Virus record (IMG/VR): IMGVR_UViG_3300049215_000529
Coordinates: 140,191 to 204,190 of that record
DNA length: 64,000 nucleotides
Strand: one strand, 5' to 3'
The notes below the pieces were generated by a model that was not told where the DNA came from, did not search any database, and saw nothing but the letters and a program-made list of their open reading frames with translations. This document shows, piece by piece, positions 6,138 to 60,822 of the stretch. The translations under genes and the position numbers were made by a program. Each line of letters begins with the position of its first letter. Position 1 is the first letter of the stretch.

Positions 6138-6314
6138 TCACAAGTGTTTATTTAGCCAATCAACTGAGAATCCGATTATGGCTATAACCGCAAATATTGG
6201 CCAAATTATGGCTGCCCAAAACATAAACCAAAAATCGTAATAGACACGCAAGAATTTTGTTAAAGCATGTCCCACAAATAATCCAATCAAAAGGTAAAGC
6301 AAGAAATAAATCAT
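6138..6314 (-). CDS. Small membrane protein, 58 aa, not in the ORF track
   Basis: MIYFLLYLLIGLFVGHALTKFLRVYYDFWFMFWAAIIWPIFAVIAIIGFSVDWLNKHL; ATG overlaps the NADAR stop; two hydrophobic segments. Confidence 0.6.
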   Translation of the reverse strand: MIYFLLYLLIGLFVGHALTKFLRVYYDFWFMFWAAIIWPIFAVIAIIGFSVDWLNKHL

Positions 6315-6757
6315 TACTCTCCCTGTAATTCTTTACGGACCCTCATCAAAGTCTTGCCAAGCATATTTTTGCCTGTACCATCTTTGCCACATCCCCAGTA
6401 CCAGTCCACGGGCGAATCTTCAATAAGCTCTTCATTGCCAGTAGCCATTAGTTCGGCGCGCAAGTCTGCATGTTGTAGAAATTTAGCTAGAACACACTGA
6501 TACATAACATCATCTTTGACATGGTTCCAATCACCACGAAGTTTTATTTTCTGTCCAAGATCACGAGCTTCGCGAGGAGTCTTAGCTGCCCAAATCATTT
6601 CTTCGTCTTCTAGGATAACAGTTTTGGCAGCTTGATAAGCCGTTTCAACATTGTCACACCAGCGCCCGCCACCCGGACCAACTATAAACATTCTGGCTTT
6701 CTTGAAGTTATTCAGAAATCCATATGGTTCATTGGTCTTATAAAATTTAATAGCCAT
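6314..6757 (-). CDS. NADAR (YbiA-like) ADP-ribosylhydrolase
   Basis: FLNNF, ETAYQAAK, AKFLQH, LIEDSPVDWYWG and GKNMLGKTLM motifs. Confidence 0.93.
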   Translation of the reverse strand: MAIKFYKTNEPYGFLNNFKKARMFIVGPGGGRWCDNVETAYQAAKTVILEDEEMIWAAKTPREARDLGQKIKLRGDWNHVKDDVMYQCVLAKFLQHADLRAELMATGNEELIEDSPVDWYWGCGKDGTGKNMLGKTLMRVRKELQGE

Positions 6758-28864: not shown

Positions 28865-29779
28865 TTACCCTCTTGGAAAGAATGAAGAATCAGATCTGTT
28901 GAATAATTGACTGTCTAAAGCAATAAGCTTATCGAAGTCTTCTACCGCATAGAAAGCAGGATCAATGGCTTTCATGCCATATTTTGCGCCAAATAAGGCG
29001 CCGACAATAGCGGCAGTCGTGTCAGTATCTCCACCAGCCTTGATAGCAGTTACCACTGCATCATAGTAGTTATCAAACTTCAAGAAGCAATATAGTGCTG
29101 CTGGAACTGTTTCTTGAACGTTAGCCTTGGTACCAAGTACCTTGAGAGCTTGCCGTGGGCTAATGTGGTCAGAGCTAATCAAAGCATCTAAACTATAGAC
29201 AGTATTCTTTACCTTACTATCTGGCAAGTGAGCCCAAATCTTTTCTAACAAATTGTCAGAATCATCATTGACAGCGTAATAAGCTGCCACTGCAATAGCA
29301 ATCGAACCAGCCTCAGCATCTGGTGATACGTGGGTGATAGCACTATCAACTTTACAGATATCGACTAATGATTTGAGGTCATTGCGGAAATAGACTCCAA
29401 ATGGTGCGGAGCGCATAGCGGTACCATTGCCAAGAGAGCCAACAATACCAGATTCACTCCAATGTTTGCCAGAAGTCAAATTCTGAATTGCCATCAAGGT
29501 AGTTTTGCCCCAACCTCTAGCTCGACCAGAAGTCATCCAATCTACGTACCTAGCAGACAAATCGTCTGGATTGAAACCACGATTCTCAATTAGAGATTCG
29601 GCAACCATCAAACTCATTTGAGTATCATCTGAGTATTGTCCTGGTTGTAGCTTATGGTGTTCACTACCCAAGAAACTTTTGCCATCCCATTCCAATAAGG
29701 CTGGGTTGTTTATTAGCTTAGTTTCAAACGGAACGCCAAGTGCATCTGCAACAGCTGTTCCTAATAGTACGTTACTCAT
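28865..29779 (-). CDS. ADP-ribosylglycohydrolase (ARH/DraG family), copy 1
   Basis: AVADALG, YSDDT, GNGTAMR, TH and GGDTDT motifs. Confidence 0.95.
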   Translation of the reverse strand: MSNVLLGTAVADALGVPFETKLINNPALLEWDGKSFLGSEHHKLQPGQYSDDTQMSLMVAESLIENRGFNPDDLSARYVDWMTSGRARGWGKTTLMAIQNLTSGKHWSESGIVGSLGNGTAMRSAPFGVYFRNDLKSLVDICKVDSAITHVSPDAEAGSIAIAVAAYYAVNDDSDNLLEKIWAHLPDSKVKNTVYSLDALISSDHISPRQALKVLGTKANVQETVPAALYCFLKFDNYYDAVVTAIKAGGDTDTTAAIVGALFGAKYGMKAIDPAFYAVEDFDKLIALDSQLFNRSDSSFFPRG

Positions 29780-30341
29780 GTATTATTCCTTCTAATAGCA
29801 TTGCCAACACATATGCATGTCCCACTTTTAGATTTGGATTGTTAACTAGTTCCCAGTAATCAAACGTACCAGGTTCCAAATTATGCGCATCAAAATCTAA
29901 AAGAAATACTTTTTCGTTAGCTTTAGCTAGATCTTTTAATTTTTCAAAAGCAAACGTTCGCTGTACTGCACGAGCATATAGCGGGATGTATATTTTCTTT
30001 CTTGCTTCTACATAAGAAAATTTTTCACCGTCCCAATAAGAATACAAAGGTTTTGCTTCTTTGCCCATTGGATAACGATCGGCTCTGATTTTGTTCCAAC
30101 CGCTCTATGCCCAATCGAAATATCTTTTGCCCACAGTTCCATTATCTTCTAGATAATATTCATAGACCTTGCTATATTGCCAAGCATTTTCCATATTTTG
30201 GGAAACATAACCATTATACAACTCACATGGTCCACAAAAGAATGGGCTTAAGGACTGGCTCCAATCTTTTGATCGAGAAGTTGCATTGACCACCAAATCA
30301 CCAGGTTGGGACTTGTAGTGGTAGTTGATGACTTTAATCAT
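29772..30341 (-). CDS. Divergent NADAR-like protein interrupted by one in-frame TAG (30105-30107)
   Basis: Track ORFs 30105..30365 and 29772..30068 are in the same frame and join as YFDWA*SGWNKIRADRYPMGK; ENAWQYSK motif. Confidence 0.7.
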
Positions 30342-30463
30342 AAATATCCTTCCAAAATCATACACAAAGCAAATGCTTGTCCTACTGGGCGGTCAGGATC
30401 ATTAACCACCTGATCCCAGGATTTCTCTAGGTAACGATGATTATATCCTTCAAAATCGATCAA
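30338..30463 (-). pseudogene. C-terminal remnant of a paralog of the NADAR-like gene
   Basis: LIDFEGYNHRYLEKSWDQVVNDPDRPVGQAFALCMILEGYL* aligns with LLDFDAHN...LVNNPNLKVGHAYVLAMLLEG; ATGA overlap with 30341. Confidence 0.65.
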
Positions 30464-30508
30464 GTAACACAAGTATGTTTGTATGTCCAATTGCTAATAT
30501 CTTGTTTT

Positions 30509-31909
30509 TTAAGCACCTTCATGACGAACTCTCTTTCTAATTTCTTCGAAATTATCGTCCACCAAAATCTCACCATTCTCATATACCGTCTTCATAACAG
30601 TGCGTTTATGAGAAACCTCATCTTCAAACAAAGGAACGGTTTCATAACCGCCGCGTTCATTGAAGCACAAATCCAAACGTCCTGCTTTGCTTGCCTTGCC
30701 CTTGTCAGTCACTGGATCTTTGAATACATCCACCGATTTGTCTCCGATGAAAATATGGCTGCACTTCATAGCAAATTTTTCAGTATCACGGTTGAGTTGT
30801 TGTAGCAAAGCGCCACCCATACCAAAAGCAATGTTCGTGGCACTGTAACCATTGTCCATCAAAGTGTCTAGGATCAGCTGGATAGACCTTTCATTGATGC
30901 CGTCGCCCTGAATGATACGGACATTTTTCAAGACCTTATAGCCCCTCTTGTTAATGGTCGTTCCAAACTTTTCTTCCAATAGTTTAACGGTCTTTAGCAC
31001 TACCGTAGGAGGATGACCAGAGTCGGGGCGAATGATGACCACTGCACCAGAATCAATCACTTCCTGCTTCAACTGATCACCCCACAAGTGAGAACAAGCA
31101 TTCCACAAGTCGTAAGAGTCCGATACACAGGCAACCAAGGCGCCCGGCTTAGCGAATTGCTTTAGCATATTACGATATGCTTCAACTTCATTTTCTTTGC
31201 CCCAAGAAGTAATGGAGCTATGTTCTGCTGCCGGAATGCTGAATCCAGCCATTGGAATATTGTAGTACTCATTGGCACATAACACTCCCACAACCGTATC
31301 ACTTCCCATAAAATTGACCAAGTGGGCTGCGCCACCAATCATAGCAGACTCTTGGCTACTAACTCCACGCGAGCCAAAGTCATGAAGCTTAAAGCTGATT
31401 TCTGCTTGCGGATCATCCGAAGATGCTTGCAATGCACGCAAAATAATACCACGAATTGTACGACTGCGGCTAGCTACCGTGATAGGATACCAAACCCTAA
31501 GCAACATGGTTTCAATCCAAGAAACAATCCAAAACACTTTCGGATCAGTAGATTCAATACTGACAAGAATATTATGGGTTGGAACCACAGTTCCTTCTGG
31601 TACGGCGCGAATACGAATGGGGAGCTTGCCTTTCAAATCTTTGGCAATGTACATCCAGCCGTCATAGTTGAATGGCTCGCCATGTGCCGCAAAGAGTACC
31701 TTGGCTTTCTCAACCTCTTCTACTGTAACTCGATGAGTCAAATATTCCTTCAAGTAGTATTGCAATCCAAAGAAAACAGTTTCACTGTATTCTCCGCCTC
31801 GGCTTTCGATGTAGGAGAACATACTTGTGGTACCAGGAGGATACTGCAAGTAGTGGGAAACTTTGTAGCTGTCTGTATCAAACAAGTAACTAAAACGATT
31901 GGTTTTCAT
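30509..31909 (-). CDS. nadV: Nicotinamide phosphoribosyltransferase (NAMPT)
   Basis: DTDSYK, HDFGSRG, PAAEHS, VSDSYD and IRPDSG motifs. Confidence 0.96.
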   Translation of the reverse strand: MKTNRFSYLFDTDSYKVSHYLQYPPGTTSMFSYIESRGGEYSETVFFGLQYYLKEYLTHRVTVEEVEKAKVLFAAHGEPFNYDGWMYIAKDLKGKLPIRIRAVPEGTVVPTHNILVSIESTDPKVFWIVSWIETMLLRVWYPITVASRSRTIRGIILRALQASSDDPQAEISFKLHDFGSRGVSSQESAMIGGAAHLVNFMGSDTVVGVLCANEYYNIPMAGFSIPAAEHSSITSWGKENEVEAYRNMLKQFAKPGALVACVSDSYDLWNACSHLWGDQLKQEVIDSGAVVIIRPDSGHPPTVVLKTVKLLEEKFGTTINKRGYKVLKNVRIIQGDGINERSIQLILDTLMDNGYSATNIAFGMGGALLQQLNRDTEKFAMKCSHIFIGDKSVDVFKDPVTDKGKASKAGRLDLCFNERGGYETVPLFEDEVSHKRTVMKTVYENGEILVDDNFEEIRKRVRHEGA

Positions 31910-31956
31910 TATACTCTCCGTATGTTTGCCATTCGTTCTCTCAGTGAGAACTTGGC

Positions 31957-32970
31957 TCAGAACTTGGAAACAAAATACTTTATTATATGGTAGTGGTCCT
32001 CGAAAAATTCATTCTCCATCGAATGAAATTCGCCCAAAGGTAACCAAAACGCTCTCTCTGCATCGTCAGCTCCTTTTACTTGAGGGAGTGGACCTATCCC
32101 CAAATCAATTAGGTATGCATTAGTAATAGTACGACCGCGAGCAGAACGCAAGGGGTCATCAAATACTTTAAAGTCGGCTATCGATTTTTTTAAATCTGGA
32201 GTATTAATTTTGATACCGGTTTCCTCTTTTAATTCTCTGAGGGCGGCGTCTTGCAATTTCTCTTTTTGATTGACGAAACCACCAGGCAGAGCCAGCAAAC
32301 CCTTACCAGGATTAGACCTTCTAGTCACAATCAATACGTGACCAGACTTCACAACTATTGTATCAACAGTTACAAATATGGGTGGAAATGGGGCTCCTCG
32401 CCATTGTTCTTTGTAATTGTCTATAAAATACTTTTCTTGCTTTATGTTCACGAATTCTTTGGTTTGCTTAAAATTTTCTAAATATTCAGCAACACCATTT
32501 GGTACCATTGTTTTGTAAGATGCGTTATGTGAAAAATATAAATCTCTAACTTGGGTGGCATGAAAATTATATTCTGTCCCGCATTGAATATATTTATATT
32601 GGGGAAAAAGTTTCAAATAATATGATGATTCATCACTTTCGTATCCTATTAGGGATACTTTTTCGGAATAATCCGTGGCTTCACTCACTTTTTGTTGAAG
32701 TGTTGATATCCACAAATTATCATTGTAAGTATAATCCTTCATTGAAATAAATATCACTCTATCTTTTTCTTCCGAAGAGAGACACCGCCTAATCATTTCT
32801 TGACGCTCATCGCCAGACCACGGATTTCTTATGGTGCGGGGCGAACCACAACTTCCCACCACCACAATCACCTTTTCTGCTATGGTAAGAGCTTTGTCCA
32901 AAATAAATTTGTGAGCTTTCTGAAGGGGAGAAAAACGCCCAATGAATACACAAAAATCAAATTTTTCCAT
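31957..32970 (-). CDS. Bifunctional NMN adenylyltransferase / ADP-ribose pyrophosphatase (NadM-Nudix)
   Basis: IGRFSPLQKAH and HAT motifs; Nudix box GGFVNQKEKLQDAALRELKEETG; start MEKFDF with GAGGT SD. Confidence 0.93.
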   Translation of the reverse strand: MEKFDFCVFIGRFSPLQKAHKFILDKALTIAEKVIVVVGSCGSPRTIRNPWSGDERQEMIRRCLSSEEKDRVIFISMKDYTYNDNLWISTLQQKVSEATDYSEKVSLIGYESDESSYYLKLFPQYKYIQCGTEYNFHATQVRDLYFSHNASYKTMVPNGVAEYLENFKQTKEFVNIKQEKYFIDNYKEQWRGAPFPPIFVTVDTIVVKSGHVLIVTRRSNPGKGLLALPGGFVNQKEKLQDAALRELKEETGIKINTPDLKKSIADFKVFDDPLRSARGRTITNAYLIDLGIGPLPQVKGADDAERAFWLPLGEFHSMENEFFEDHYHIIKYFVSKF

Positions 32971-33025
32971 ATTAACCTCGCTCTTCTTTAGAGCATGCAT
33001 TCGTCCTCTCAATGAGAACTTGCAT

Positions 33026-33790
33026 TCAAACATATATCACGATATTAGTAGCACAATTGGTTTGAAATTTAATAAGTTGGTCTATCCATTTTACCCACGC
33101 CGAATATGACATATCTAATTTGGCACGATTACAGACCCAGCAACAAGTTACACAATTCTGTATGGTATAATCGCTATTGCTATCCAACCTATCTATGCCA
33201 TTATAATTAAATATGATTGTGTTATCGGTTCTTTTAATAACTACAGTTTTATTGGGAGATACGCCACAATAATGGCAATCTTTAGATATTAGAGATGAGA
33301 ATTCATCATACGATAATTTCCACTCAATATTTCTGCGCTTAGCATTTCTTTTATATGAATTCAAAATTCTTTTGGTTGCTCTATCATCTTCTGATAATAA
33401 ACCAATTGTTGAGTTTTTATTTTGAGCACGCTTGCATCCGCAACTTTTTGATGCACCAGCGATTAAGTTTTTCGAAGGAATATAACAAATTGTTCCACAA
33501 ATACATTTGCATTCCCATATAATTGAGCCATTATTCGATCTTTCATCAGTGATTTTCAATACTGACAAAAATCCAAATCTCATTCCCAAAAGACATGAAT
33601 AATCTGCAAAACATACTCTTTTTCCACAAGAGCGGGAGCGACCTGTTACCAAGTCGGCTGTTCTAATTGATTTTTCAAAACCACAAATACATCTAACTAA
33701 GGTGCGAGATTTTGGCTTATTTATTTCGATTACTGTCCAAGAACCAAATTGATCATTACAAAAAACATGATATTTAGATTTTAAAGGCAT
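33026..33790 (-). CDS. HNH-like homing endonuclease
   Basis: Repeated CICG/RSCG units; CHYCG...GIDRLDS...CCWVCNRAK. Confidence 0.85.
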   Translation of the reverse strand: MPLKSKYHVFCNDQFGSWTVIEINKPKSRTLVRCICGFEKSIRTADLVTGRSRSCGKRVCFADYSCLLGMRFGFLSVLKITDERSNNGSIIWECKCICGTICYIPSKNLIAGASKSCGCKRAQNKNSTIGLLSEDDRATKRILNSYKRNAKRRNIEWKLSYDEFSSLISKDCHYCGVSPNKTVVIKRTDNTIIFNYNGIDRLDSNSDYTIQNCVTCCWVCNRAKLDMSYSAWVKWIDQLIKFQTNCATNIVIYV

Positions 33791-49630: not shown

Positions 49631-50233
49631 CTATCTGGTATCTTCAATTTTCATATTCTTCATTGGAGCATAGGACATGCGATGCAAAGGAGAAGGTCCG
49701 AACTTCTCAATGGCAGCCAAGTGATCCTTTGAACCATAACCGGCATTTGAATCCCAACCGTATTCGGGATATTGTTTATGCAATAATTGCATCTTCTTAT
49801 CTCGATACACCTTGGCAAAAATGCTAGCAGCCATCACCGTTGGATACTTGCTATCCGCCTTGATGACGCTCTGGATACGATAATCATCCACGCCCAAGTT
49901 GTCAAACTTTAAAATTCCATCCACAATGATCGTTGACTCTTCGTCGTACAACCGCTTGAAGCATTCTACGTAGCAATCCTTTAAGGCAACAGCTACTCCT
50001 ACCTTATCAATCTGAACGTTGCTTCTTTCAGCAAGAGCGAACCTAATGGATGCATTGGCAATCAAATCGTTCAGCTTGTCACAGACGGATTCCCTTTTCT
50101 TAGCTGACAACTTCTTGCTATCATTGAGTCCATCGATTTTCCAATCGGCAGGAGCACGAATTGCACAAACTACCACGGGTCCAGCTAATGGACCATACCC
50201 TACCTCATCCGCCCCAATAGTATATTGTATCAT
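49631..50233 (-). CDS. rnhB: Ribonuclease HII
   Basis: GADEVGYGPLAGP, DSKKL, IVDG, KADS, AASIFAK and HRMSY motifs; ends in TAG. Confidence 0.95.
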   Translation of the reverse strand: MIQYTIGADEVGYGPLAGPVVVCAIRAPADWKIDGLNDSKKLSAKKRESVCDKLNDLIANASIRFALAERSNVQIDKVGVAVALKDCYVECFKRLYDEESTIIVDGILKFDNLGVDDYRIQSVIKADSKYPTVMAASIFAKVYRDKKMQLLHKQYPEYGWDSNAGYGSKDHLAAIEKFGPSPLHRMSYAPMKNMKIEDTR

Positions 50234-59073: not shown

Positions 59074-59138
59074 GTATCTTATCCTTTTTGTTGATTCCAA
59101 AGCATTGTATAGCTCAACAAGGCGATAATATTCCCAAG

Positions 59139-59230
59139 TGGCGGAAAAGGAAGGATTCGAACCTTCGGACCACCGTTAGGCGGTCTCTTGTTTTAGAGAC
59201 AAGCGGTATAATCCACTCACCCACATTTCC
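59139..59230 (-). tRNA. Amber suppressor tRNA (anticodon CTA), serine-type body
   Basis: Perfect stem CTTGT/ACAAG; loop CTCTAAA; long variable arm GACCGCC-TAAC-GGTGGTC; G73; CCA. Confidence 0.88.
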
Positions 59231-59240
59231 ATCTTACGTG

Positions 59241-59372
59241 TCAGCCAACACAATAGACTATCTCTTTAAAAGCACAACGAGAACAAACACTTTCATAGGT
59301 ACCAGCTCGTTGTATCTTATTGTTGAAGATCAACTTATGATAGCCTAGCCAACACAAAACCTTATCTATCAT
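59241..59372 (-). CDS. Small Zn-binding protein (DUF1660-like), 43 aa, not in the ORF track
   Basis: MIDKVLCWLGYHKL...VCSRC...; fills the gap between two tRNAs exactly. Confidence 0.55.
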   Translation of the reverse strand: MIDKVLCWLGYHKLIFNNKIQRAGTYESVCSRCAFKEIVYCVG

Positions 59373-59469: not shown

Positions 59470-59495
59470 GTATGTATTATATCTCGATATTGATA
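59470..59495 (-). promoter_or_regulatory. 26-bp promoter-like repeat, copy 1
   Basis: GTATGTATTATATCTCGATATTGATA; TATAAT on the minus strand; 25/26 identical to 61461-61486. Confidence 0.65.
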
Positions 59496-60466
59496 AGTTC
59501 GTCAGTCAAATCCTGCAATAATTCGAAGTTTTCAACGCTCTTATACTCTTCTGGAATGCCCTCTAAACCATACAGCGTGCCAGCCATAGCGCCCACTATA
59601 GCAGCCGTTGTGTCCGTATCGCCTCCACCCTTGACTGCCATCACAACACAATCTTTAAAATTATCTGTGGCGGCGAGACAATAGAAAGCGGCGGCTACCG
59701 TCTCAGGAACATAACCCCTGGTCCCGATTTCGGCAAGTGCCTCTTCTGCCGGAACCTCATCTTTCCAAAGTTCATATGCCAATTTCAATTTGGCAACAAC
59801 AATACAATCGTTAACCGAAAGGACATTAATCACTCCCGGAAGAACTCCAAGAGATGAATGTTTGACTGCTGGAACATCTCCCATAGCCAATAAAGCAGTT
59901 CCCAATGCAACTGCAATGGATCCCATTTTAGGTTCATCCGAATTGTGAGTAATGGAAGCATCTTCCACTGCAACCGACAATAGCTTGCTTAAATCATGAC
60001 GATAAGCCAAACCAATTGGTGAAGCTCTCATTGCAGTACCATTGCCACCAACAGGAGTGCCATCATTGTTAAGTGATAATCCACTTTCCAAGTAAGACAT
60101 TCCGTTCTTGATATTATGAAGAGCAGCCGCAGTAGTCCCACCAATACCTCGGGTATTACCAGACTCCATCCAAGCCAAATATCTCTGAGCAACGTCCTCA
60201 GCATTGAAGCCATTGTGTTCTACTAGGCTAGTTGCCAATGCAATACTCATTAGGGTATCGTCGGTGTATTGACCTGGTTCACCAACCCAAAACGTACCAC
60301 CAGCTTGGAACTGCCCATCCCAAGCAACTAGCTTTGGATTGTCAGCAGGCTTTGTTTCAAATGGGTTACCAAGGGCATCACCAATGGCGCAACCAACTAA
60401 TGTAGCAATCTTCTTCATTGAATACCTAATAAAATAACTGGAGGAAGTAGTAGGATTCGAACCCAC
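59477..60466 (-). CDS. ADP-ribosylglycohydrolase (ARH/DraG family), copy 2
   Basis: AIGDALG, YTDDT, GNGTAMR, TH and GGDTDT motifs; true start probably MKKIATL just after tRNA-Ser(TGA). Confidence 0.93.
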   Translation of the reverse strand: MGSNPTTSSSYFIRYSMKKIATLVGCAIGDALGNPFETKPADNPKLVAWDGQFQAGGTFWVGEPGQYTDDTLMSIALATSLVEHNGFNAEDVAQRYLAWMESGNTRGIGGTTAAALHNIKNGMSYLESGLSLNNDGTPVGGNGTAMRASPIGLAYRHDLSKLLSVAVEDASITHNSDEPKMGSIAVALGTALLAMGDVPAVKHSSLGVLPGVINVLSVNDCIVVAKLKLAYELWKDEVPAEEALAEIGTRGYVPETVAAAFYCLAATDNFKDCVVMAVKGGGDTDTTAAIVGAMAGTLYGLEGIPEEYKSVENFELLQDLTDELINIEI

Positions 60467-60734: not shown

Positions 60735-60822
60735 TGGAGGAAATGGTGGGATTCGAACCCACGGAACCTTTCGGTTCTCTTGTTTAGTAGACAAGCCTTA
60801 TAAACCACTCTAGCACATTTCC
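60735..60822 (-). tRNA. tRNA-Ser(ACT), rare A34 anticodon
   Basis: Stem CTTGT/ACAAG; loop CTACTAA; long variable arm; CCA. Confidence 0.85.

What the first reader, a model, noticed from the sequence alone, without database searches (positions are those of the whole stretch)
29772..30341. In-frame amber codon inside a NADAR-like gene, a candidate substrate for the encoded suppressor tRNA
The two track ORFs are one gene split only by TAG at 30105-30107 (YFDWA*SGWNKIRADRYPMGK). The 12 codons after the stop stay in frame and look coding. Read-through would give a 189-aa protein, so expression may depend on the phage's own CUA tRNA, acting as a timing or host-gating switch. Caveat: a truncated paralog lies immediately upstream, so simple decay (CAG to TAG) is also plausible.
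Basis: partly seen in the sequence, partly recalled or inferred. Interest (0 to 1): 0.68.

Follow-up and report, generated by a model that had tools for sequence, protein, structure and literature searches.

The report
Amber codon plus home-made serine suppressor
A huge phage from moss metagenomes has one conserved NADAR-like gene interrupted by a single TAG codon and carries a serine tRNA whose anticodon has mutated to read TAG, so the gene is probably still read through; this looks like the first step of a stop codon becoming a sense codon, not a dedicated switch.

Summary
The minus-strand gene 29772..30341 is one 189-codon DUF6939 gene with a NADAR-like fold, interrupted only by TAG at 30105-30107. 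Over 1,200 homologues are uninterrupted, and 43 relatives checked at DNA level have a sense codon there, mostly CAA.

The tRNA-CUA at 59139..59230 is an intact serine-type tRNA. It sits where relatives carry tRNA-Ser(CGA), one anticodon base away, as in E. coli supD.

The standard code fits the genome. No other gene in about 220 kb is split by TAG, including portal, terminase and protease. TAG ends only 1 of 204 confident genes. Close relatives without the suppressor are also depleted (4/187), against 16% in a GC-matched distant huge phage. So the depletion came before the suppressor.

The 110 codons after TAG keep 34 of 34 highly conserved positions. The adjacent 43-codon paralogue remnant has lost 5 of 12.

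Best reading (about 0.55): a lineage-specific amber mutation decoded as serine by the phage's own suppressor, an early stage of the proposed route to stop-codon recoding. A plain, recent pseudogene remains plausible (about 0.3), because this family is also broken in other phages. Nothing supports a timing or host-gating switch. No expression or protein data exist.

The parts
29772..30341 (-). DUF6939 / NADAR-fold gene, 189 codons with one in-frame TAG; ATG at 30341, TAA at 29772-29774
   Evidence: The Pfam DUF6939 match spans the stop. An AlphaFold model of a 70%-identical intact homologue (pLDDT 96.8) hits NADAR structures 8bat, 8bau and 2b3w.
30105..30107 (-). In-frame amber codon (TAG, followed by A), codon 79
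   Evidence: The column in 120 homologues reads Q71 K30 E9 N3 T3 S1 C1 R1 I1. 43 DNA-level relatives have sense codons here, mostly CAA, and no in-frame stop anywhere in the gene.
59139..59230 (-). Serine-type amber suppressor tRNA, anticodon CUA, 92 nt, long variable arm, G73, encoded CCA. ARAGORN labels it 'Pyl' only because of the anticodon.
   Evidence: Rfam tRNA 55.6 bits, the best of the cluster. It is the positional and reciprocal-best orthologue of tRNA-Ser(CGA) in relatives.
30341..30469 (-). 43-codon remnant of a second DUF6939 paralogue (C-terminus only), inside ORF 30338..30490; its TGA overlaps the ATG of the TAG gene
   Evidence: 62% identical to the C-terminus of P0096. Relatives L003/L004/L005/L008 have an intact tandem paralogue. 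It deviates at 5 of 12 columns conserved at >=95%, including the invariant D and H.
28865..29779 (-). Context: ADP-ribosylglycohydrolase directly downstream
   Evidence: Pfam PF03747, E 2e-72; same synteny in relatives.
30509..33033 (-). Context: NAMPT (30509..31909) and NMNAT-Nudix (31957..33033) directly upstream; an NAD salvage pair
   Evidence: same order in relatives.

Best explanation
A lineage-specific nonsense mutation changed codon 79 of a conserved NADAR-fold (DUF6939) gene to TAG. The ancestral codon was most likely CAG, AAG or GAG. The same phage carries a tRNA-Ser whose anticodon changed from CGA to CUA by one base. Seryl-tRNA synthetase ignores the anticodon, so this tRNA should be charged with serine and insert Ser at UAG in competition with the host's release factor 1. 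That would give a full-length 189-aa protein with Ser79 at reduced yield, plus a 78-aa truncated product.

The cost of such a suppressor is low here, because the whole clade had already almost stopped using TAG as a terminator. The few TAG terminators left are followed by another stop within 1-27 codons. The result is a minimal TAG=Ser 'recoding' of a single gene. It fits the proposed path: stop-codon depletion, then a suppressor tRNA, then the first in-frame stops.

Shown: the gene's anatomy, the tRNA's type and ancestry, the TAG depletion, and the lack of decay downstream of TAG.

Inferred: expression and charging of the tRNA, actual read-through, and the order of the two mutations.
For: - One gene, one TAG, with family homology on both sides.
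- The tRNA-CUA is the best-scoring tRNA of its cluster. It has G1-C72, G2-C71, G73, a long variable arm and encoded CCA.
- In relatives G009, L158/L159 and L160, the slot between tRNA-Ser(GCU) and tRNA-Trp holds tRNA-Ser(CGA). In this phage it holds the CUA tRNA, and there is no Ser(CGA). The two are reciprocal best matches at 78.3%, comparable to the other Ser orthologue pairs at 75-82%.
- TAG terminators among confident genes: own 1/204, close relatives 4/187, further relatives 3/86. By contrast, GC-matched distant huge phage G002 has 55/349 (Fisher p 6e-11) and G005 has 30/349.
- After TAG, 34 of 34 columns conserved at >=95% are kept. The neighbouring remnant has lost 5 of 12, which serves as an internal control for what decay looks like at this locus.
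- The TAG column is a variable polar position where S and T occur naturally.
- TAG is followed by A, a context known to favour amber suppression in E. coli (my own knowledge, not tested here).
- Borges et al. describe exactly this order of events as the route to recoding (bioRxiv 10.1101/2021.08.26.457843).
Against: - There are no RNA, tRNA-charging or peptide data. The one RNA contig found lies in NAMPT, not in this gene.
- Only one genotype is known (two near-identical contigs), so the age of the TAG and of the anticodon change cannot be set. A very recent nonsense mutation would also leave the downstream part intact.
- UCG codon use has not dropped relative to G009 (7.1% vs 6.1%). This fits a recent anticodon change.
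- The closest relative found (L157, 83% nt identity) has simply lost this tRNA gene, which shows the gene is dispensable rather than selected.
- DUF6939 genes are broken by frameshifts in other phages (L161, L163), and a paralogue has decayed at this very locus. The phage also has a canonical NADAR gene that could make this one redundant.
- About half of the genome is missing (CheckV completeness 47%).
Confidence: 0.55

Rival explanations
1. Plain pseudogene. A recent nonsense mutation inactivated a dispensable accessory gene. The suppressor tRNA is unrelated to it, and any read-through is incidental and not under selection.
For: A paralogue has already decayed to a 43-codon remnant next door. 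Orthologues in L161 (seen on 14 contigs) and L163 are broken by single-base insertions. The phage has a canonical NADAR at 6314..6757 that may cover the function. No relative has a stop at this codon, so the TAG is not a conserved feature. The age of the TAG cannot be determined.
Against: The break is exactly the one codon the phage's own derived tRNA reads. There is no second lesion in 189 codons. All 34 highly conserved downstream positions are intact, while the neighbouring remnant lost 5 of 12. If the tRNA is functional, some full-length protein is made whether or not it is selected for.
Confidence: 0.3
2. Programmed regulatory switch. The TAG makes expression of this gene depend on accumulation of the phage suppressor tRNA, which delays or gates its production.
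For: A cognate suppressor is encoded in the same genome. Recoded phages are proposed to use in-frame stops for timing.
Against: It is one gene among about 276. It sits in an NAD/ADP-ribose island rather than among late or lysis genes. Portal, terminase and protease carry no TAG. None of 43 DNA-level relatives and none of more than 1,200 protein homologues shows a stop here. The suppressor is confined to this genotype.
Confidence: 0.1
3. Genome-wide alternative code (TAG reassigned, as in code 15), or an assembly or sequencing error at the TAG.
For: Distant relatives are huge phages, a group in which TAG recoding is known. Only contig-level read evidence is available.
Against: Reading TAG as sense does not lengthen the long ORFs. 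No other gene is split by TAG. Real genes still end in TAG, for example RNase HII at 49631..50233. No RF1/RF2 gene is present in the 204 kb. The same TAG appears in two assemblies and two Logan data sets at ~11x.
Confidence: 0.04

Closest known systems
E. coli supD (serU) and phage T4 psu1: amber suppressors made by an anticodon mutation in a tRNA-Ser (from my own knowledge of classical genetics)
   Same: The tRNA is serine-type, the anticodon is CUA, and it is one base from CGA. Charging does not depend on the anticodon. It would rescue an amber mutation elsewhere in the same genome.
   Different: This one was found in a wild, uncultivated huge phage rather than selected in the laboratory. 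Its function here is inferred, not tested.
Stop-codon-recoded phages (TAG to Gln, 'code 15': crAss-like, Lak and others) and their standard-code relatives that carry suppressor tRNAs (Borges et al., bioRxiv 10.1101/2021.08.26.457843)
   Same: A phage-encoded tRNA-CUA, depleted TAG terminators, and an in-frame TAG in a phage that otherwise uses the standard code. It fits their proposed order: depletion, then suppressor, then in-frame stops.
   Different: One interrupted gene rather than tens, and it is not in structural or lysis genes. The predicted amino acid is Ser rather than Gln. GC content is about 40%, not low. The suppressor arose from a resident tRNA by one substitution. No release factor gene was found.
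NADAR superfamily ADP-ribosylglycohydrolases (DarG1, YbiA, phage AdfN)
   Same: The fold: Z 9.4, 7.3 and 7.2 to 8bat, 8bau and 2b3w, well above the next hit. An 'NVE-x-A-(W/Y)-Q-x-x-K' motif aligns with the phage's own canonical NADAR. The family has an invariant His; phage NADARs are reported to have His at a catalytic position, but the correspondence of positions was not tested. The genomic company is NAD and ADP-ribose genes.
   Different: There is no match to Pfam NADAR PF08719 at E<=1. Profile similarity to a true NADAR is weak (hhalign E 0.0033 over 26 columns). No activity has been tested. Pfam treats the family as a separate entry of unknown function, DUF6939.

Membership tests
Serine-type amber suppressor tRNA (supD-like) | Canonical cloverleaf with a 7-nt anticodon loop, U33, anticodon CUA and a purine at position 37 | tested here: met
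   ARAGORN and the Rfam tRNA model (55.6 bits); loop C-U-CUA-A-A.
Serine-type amber suppressor tRNA (supD-like) | Serine identity set: long variable arm, G1-C72, G2-C71, G73 | tested here: met
   The alignment with four neighbouring tRNA-Ser genes and the Rfam alignment show all of these. The identity rules come from PMC9976931.
Serine-type amber suppressor tRNA (supD-like) | Descent from a sense-reading tRNA-Ser by an anticodon change | tested here: met
   Same slot as tRNA-Ser(CGA) in G009, L158/L159 and L160; reciprocal best match at 78.3%.
Serine-type amber suppressor tRNA (supD-like) | Expressed, serylated, and inserts Ser at UAG in vivo | not testable with these tools
   No tRNA or peptide data were available. 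The only RNA contig found lies in NAMPT.
Stop-codon-recoded phage (TAG reassigned, code-15-like) | Many genes with in-frame TAG; coding density rises when TAG is read as sense | tested here: not met
   Long ORFs are unchanged when TAG is read as sense. One interrupted gene among about 276.
Stop-codon-recoded phage (TAG reassigned, code-15-like) | TAG rare or absent as a true terminator | tested here: met
   1/204 confident genes, against 55/349 in GC-matched G002. Close relatives without the suppressor show the same depletion.
Stop-codon-recoded phage (TAG reassigned, code-15-like) | In-frame stops concentrated in late, structural or lysis genes; often a phage RF2 | tested here: not met
   Portal, terminase and protease carry no TAG. 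No RF family hit. Half of the genome has not been seen.
NADAR superfamily | YbiA-like fold | tested here: met
   VIA-align Z 9.4 (153 residues aligned, rmsd 4.0) to 8bat; 7.3 to 8bau; 7.2 to 2b3w; next hit 4.7. Foldseek probability 0.99 and 0.91. The model is of the intact homologue P0005, 70% identical to the window's gene.
NADAR superfamily | Sequence match to the Pfam NADAR model PF08719 | tested here: not met
   Only DUF6939 is reported at E<=1. hhalign against the phage's own PF08719 protein aligns 26 columns, E 0.0033.
NADAR superfamily | Conserved catalytic Glu and Lys in the helix motif, and an acidic or His residue at the second catalytic site | tested here: inconclusive
   E51, K58, D149, D151 and H175 are invariant in the family, and E51..K58 aligns with the NADAR motif. 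Equivalence of the second site was not checked residue by residue. The residue roles come from PMC11543638.
NADAR superfamily | ADP-ribosyl-nucleobase glycohydrolase activity | not testable with these tools
   Needs a biochemical assay.

The most novel reading that the evidence does not exclude
This phage is caught at the very start of a genetic-code change that is in no NCBI table (TAG = Ser). Its clade first purged TAG terminators. A resident tRNA-Ser(CGA) then became a CUA suppressor by one base change, and the first sense-TAG has appeared in a conserved gene that stays functional only through that tRNA. This would be a natural, fixed case of intergenic (informational) suppression in a wild virus.
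Probability: 0.3. Interest if true: 0.7.

Novelty: new member of a known kind. Interest (0 to 1): 0.5.

Why it matters
Models of how stop codons become sense codons (codon capture versus an ambiguous intermediate) rest mostly on end states. This genome shows the inferred order of events in one lineage and its relatives. TAG terminators are nearly gone across the clade, the suppressor was created from a resident tRNA by one substitution, and exactly one in-frame TAG exists.

That makes the early stage directly testable with a two-gene reporter (gene plus tRNA). It also has an annotation consequence: standard-code gene callers split this gene into two hypothetical ORFs. The interrupted gene belongs to a large uncharacterised phage family (DUF6939). 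This work links the family by fold to NADAR ADP-ribosylglycohydrolases, which are known phage counter-defence enzymes.

Tried and rejected
- Genome-wide TAG, TGA or TAA reassignment: rejected. The standard code gives full coding density and TAG-as-sense adds nothing to long ORFs.
- More TAG-split genes: none found, either from downstream extensions of TAG-ending genes or from upstream segments bounded by TAG.
- Suppressor as the cause of TAG depletion: I first took G002 as a 'relative without suppressor'. That was wrong. Its last 76 kb holds a 75-nt tRNA-CUA, and G002 shares only 26 of 276 proteins with this phage. Closer relatives without a CUA tRNA are equally TAG-poor, so the depletion predates the suppressor.
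- The same suppressor in other phages: the exact anticodon stem-loop occurs in no other IMG/VR tRNA. A 3'-end pattern picked up mostly unrelated tRNAs.
- Closer relatives for dating: the IMG/VR and JGI metagenome scans gave nothing above 62% for this protein, apart from the same-phage contig. A fragment-size search for TAG-split orthologues found only distant fragments, and two that I checked are frameshifts.
- Release factor and seryl-tRNA synthetase genes: none in the 204 kb.
- Reads: only contig-level data, with no variant at the TAG. One G/A variant lies at 30638 in NAMPT. RNA contigs do not cover the gene.
- Sequence-level search of solved structures: chance hits only. No paper mentions DUF6939.
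I repeated it from files.
- I read the gene through only with X at the TAG. I folded an intact homologue rather than a read-through version.

Full report
**What is there**

The window is the right-hand 64 kb of a 204,190-bp IMG/VR virus contig (GC 39.5%, CheckV completeness 47%). The contig comes from moss metagenomes.

On the minus strand, ATG at 30341 opens a frame ending at TAA 29772-29774. It holds a single in-frame TAG at 30105-30107. Pfam DUF6939 matches across the stop (36.4 bits). More than 1,200 database proteins of 185-200 aa align end to end at up to 70% identity.

A second IMG/VR contig differs by 1 base in 114,531 bp, and Logan contigs of two data sets at ~11x carry the same TAG. 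This rules out a one-off assembly error. These may be the source samples, so they are not independent evolutionary evidence.

**What the gene is**

An AlphaFold model of an intact homologue (P0005, 70% identical, pLDDT 96.8) hits only NADAR/YbiA structures clearly:
- 8bat, Z 9.4
- 8bau, Z 7.3
- 2b3w, Z 7.2
- next hit, Z 4.7 (Foldseek agrees)

The family's invariant 'NVENAWQxxK' motif aligns with the corresponding motif of the phage's own canonical NADAR gene at 6314..6757. NADAR enzymes remove ADP-ribose from nucleobases, and phage versions (AdfN) defeat the DarTG1 defence system (PMC11543638, PMC11825919).

The gene sits in a conserved island: NMNAT-Nudix, NAMPT, DUF6939, ADP-ribosylglycohydrolase, UvrD helicase. 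'NADAR-like' is therefore fair at the level of fold. Membership by sequence model is not met, and activity is untested.

**The tRNA**

ARAGORN calls the 92-nt gene at 59139..59230 'Pyl' only because of its CUA anticodon. It is the best-scoring tRNA of its cluster (Rfam 55.6 bits). It has a long variable arm, G1-C72, G2-C71, G73 and an encoded CCA, and it lies among four tRNA-Ser genes. [quoted passage not shown]

Three relatives hold tRNA-Ser(CGA) in the slot between tRNA-Ser(GCU) and tRNA-Trp:
- G009
- L158/L159, 77% identical in the flanking ADP-ribosylglycohydrolase
- L160, 74% identical, on a 467-kb NCBI contig

This phage has the CUA tRNA in that slot and no Ser(CGA). The two are reciprocal best matches at 78.3%. 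CGA to CUA is one base, the same change as in E. coli supD (my own knowledge).

The closest relative found (L157, 83% nt identity) lacks the 188-nt segment that holds this tRNA. The gene is therefore dispensable in this sub-lineage.

**Genome-wide view**

The standard code fits. Reading TAG as sense does not lengthen long ORFs.

With a simple codon-usage gene finder I found no other gene split by TAG. This covers 204 kb plus the extra 15.8 kb from the second contig. That sequence includes a protease-domain head protein, portal, large terminase and DNA polymerase.

TAG as a terminator among confident genes:

| Genome set | TAG terminators |
|---|---|
| This phage | 1 of 204 (RNase HII, with TAA four codons later) |
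| Close relatives G007-G009 (53-61% aa identity, GC 30-48%) | 4 of 187 |
| Further relatives | 3 of 86 |
| G002, distant huge phage, GC-matched | 55 of 349 |
| G005, distant huge phage | 30 of 349 |

The scarcity of TAG terminators is thus a clade trait that predates the suppressor. It lowers the cost of having one. G002 and G005 each carry an unrelated 74-75-nt tRNA-CUA and still use TAG normally. Mere presence of a tRNA-CUA therefore does not predict depletion.

**Is the gene decaying?**

The TAG column is a variable polar position: Q71, K30, E9, N3, T3, S1, C1, R1, I1 in 120 homologues. All 43 relatives inspected at DNA level have a sense codon there, mostly CAA, and no stop anywhere in the gene.

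Downstream of TAG, the gene keeps 34 of 34 columns conserved at >=95%. That is as good as or better than intact homologues.

The 43-codon remnant just upstream (30341..30469) is the C-terminus of a second paralogue, which relatives keep intact. It deviates at 5 of 12 such columns, including an invariant Asp and the invariant His. So decay does occur at this locus, but it is not yet visible in the TAG gene. This means either continued selection through read-through or a very recent mutation.

Two points argue against over-reading this. DUF6939 orthologues in two other phages carry single-base insertions. UCG usage has not shifted after the loss of tRNA-Ser(CGA).

**Verdict**

The most likely account (about 0.55) is a lineage-specific amber mutation read as serine by the phage's own supD-like tRNA. 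This would yield full-length protein at reduced level. It matches the early stage of the path proposed by Borges et al.: stop-codon depletion, then a suppressor tRNA, then in-frame stops.

A plain recent pseudogene is the main rival (about 0.3). A dedicated timing or host-gating switch has no support (about 0.1). Genome-wide recoding and assembly error are essentially excluded.

The order of the two mutations, expression and charging of the tRNA, and actual read-through are all inferred. About half of the genome is unseen.

Noticed in passing
window 60735..60822 (-): A tRNA-Ser with the unusual anticodon ACU (A34). It shares its 5' half and anticodon stem with the suppressor (78% identity) and is also present in the closest relative L157. 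It is absent from G009, L160 and L158.
   Followed up: partly
window 6314..6757 (-): A canonical NADAR gene (Pfam PF08719, 122.8 bits) in the same phage. It is a possible functional back-up for the TAG-interrupted NADAR-like gene.
   Followed up: partly
window 59477..60466 (-): A second ADP-ribosylglycohydrolase (PF03747) sits inside the tRNA-Ser cluster. It is conserved at 63-90% identity in relatives in the same position, so the phage has two ARH genes plus the NAMPT/NMNAT pair.
   Followed up: partly
L161:2730-3288 and L163:9874-10459 (also L163:10778-11334): DUF6939 orthologues in two low-GC relatives are each broken by a one-base insertion a few codons apart, next to the ENxWQ motif. The L161 form was seen on 14 contigs. 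In L163 the tandem paralogue is also broken, and the gene calls for ARH, NAMPT and UvrD are short. These could be pseudogenes, assembly errors or frameshifting; I did not resolve which.
   Followed up: partly
G002:C1:409748-409822 (-) and G005:C1:353926-353999 (-): Two distantly related complete huge phages (476 kb and 405 kb) each carry a short-arm tRNA-CUA of another type. Both still end 8-16% of genes with TAG, and in G005 I found no TAG-split gene; G002 was checked only over its first 400 kb, where the seven TAG-bounded in-frame pairs matched the rate seen at TAA and TGA. The role of these tRNAs is unexplained.
   Followed up: partly
L157:1190-1324 versus window 59078..59265: The closest relative (83% nt identity) lacks the 188-nt segment that holds the Ser(CGA)/CUA tRNA gene. 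Only 24 nt separate the flanking homologous blocks.
   Followed up: yes
window 30638: A G/A polymorphism inside NAMPT in one moss data set (two 61-nt contigs at ~3.6x each). It is the only variant seen in the 4 kb laid. A 151-nt RNA contig identical to 30757-30907 occurs in moss/plant metatranscriptomes.
   Followed up: no
G000:C1:133422-134624 (-), outside the window: The phage encodes a tyrosyl-tRNA synthetase (PHROG 9270, E 1e-125) and at least 32 tRNAs in the half-genome. Relatives encode PheRS and class-II synthetase fragments near the same clusters.
   Followed up: no
L032:717-1190 (-) (second contig, beyond the window's right end): An HNH-type endonuclease ORF lies on the opposite strand directly after a gene that ends in TAG. 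Several HNH and LAGLIDADG genes interrupt the synteny in relatives.
   Followed up: no
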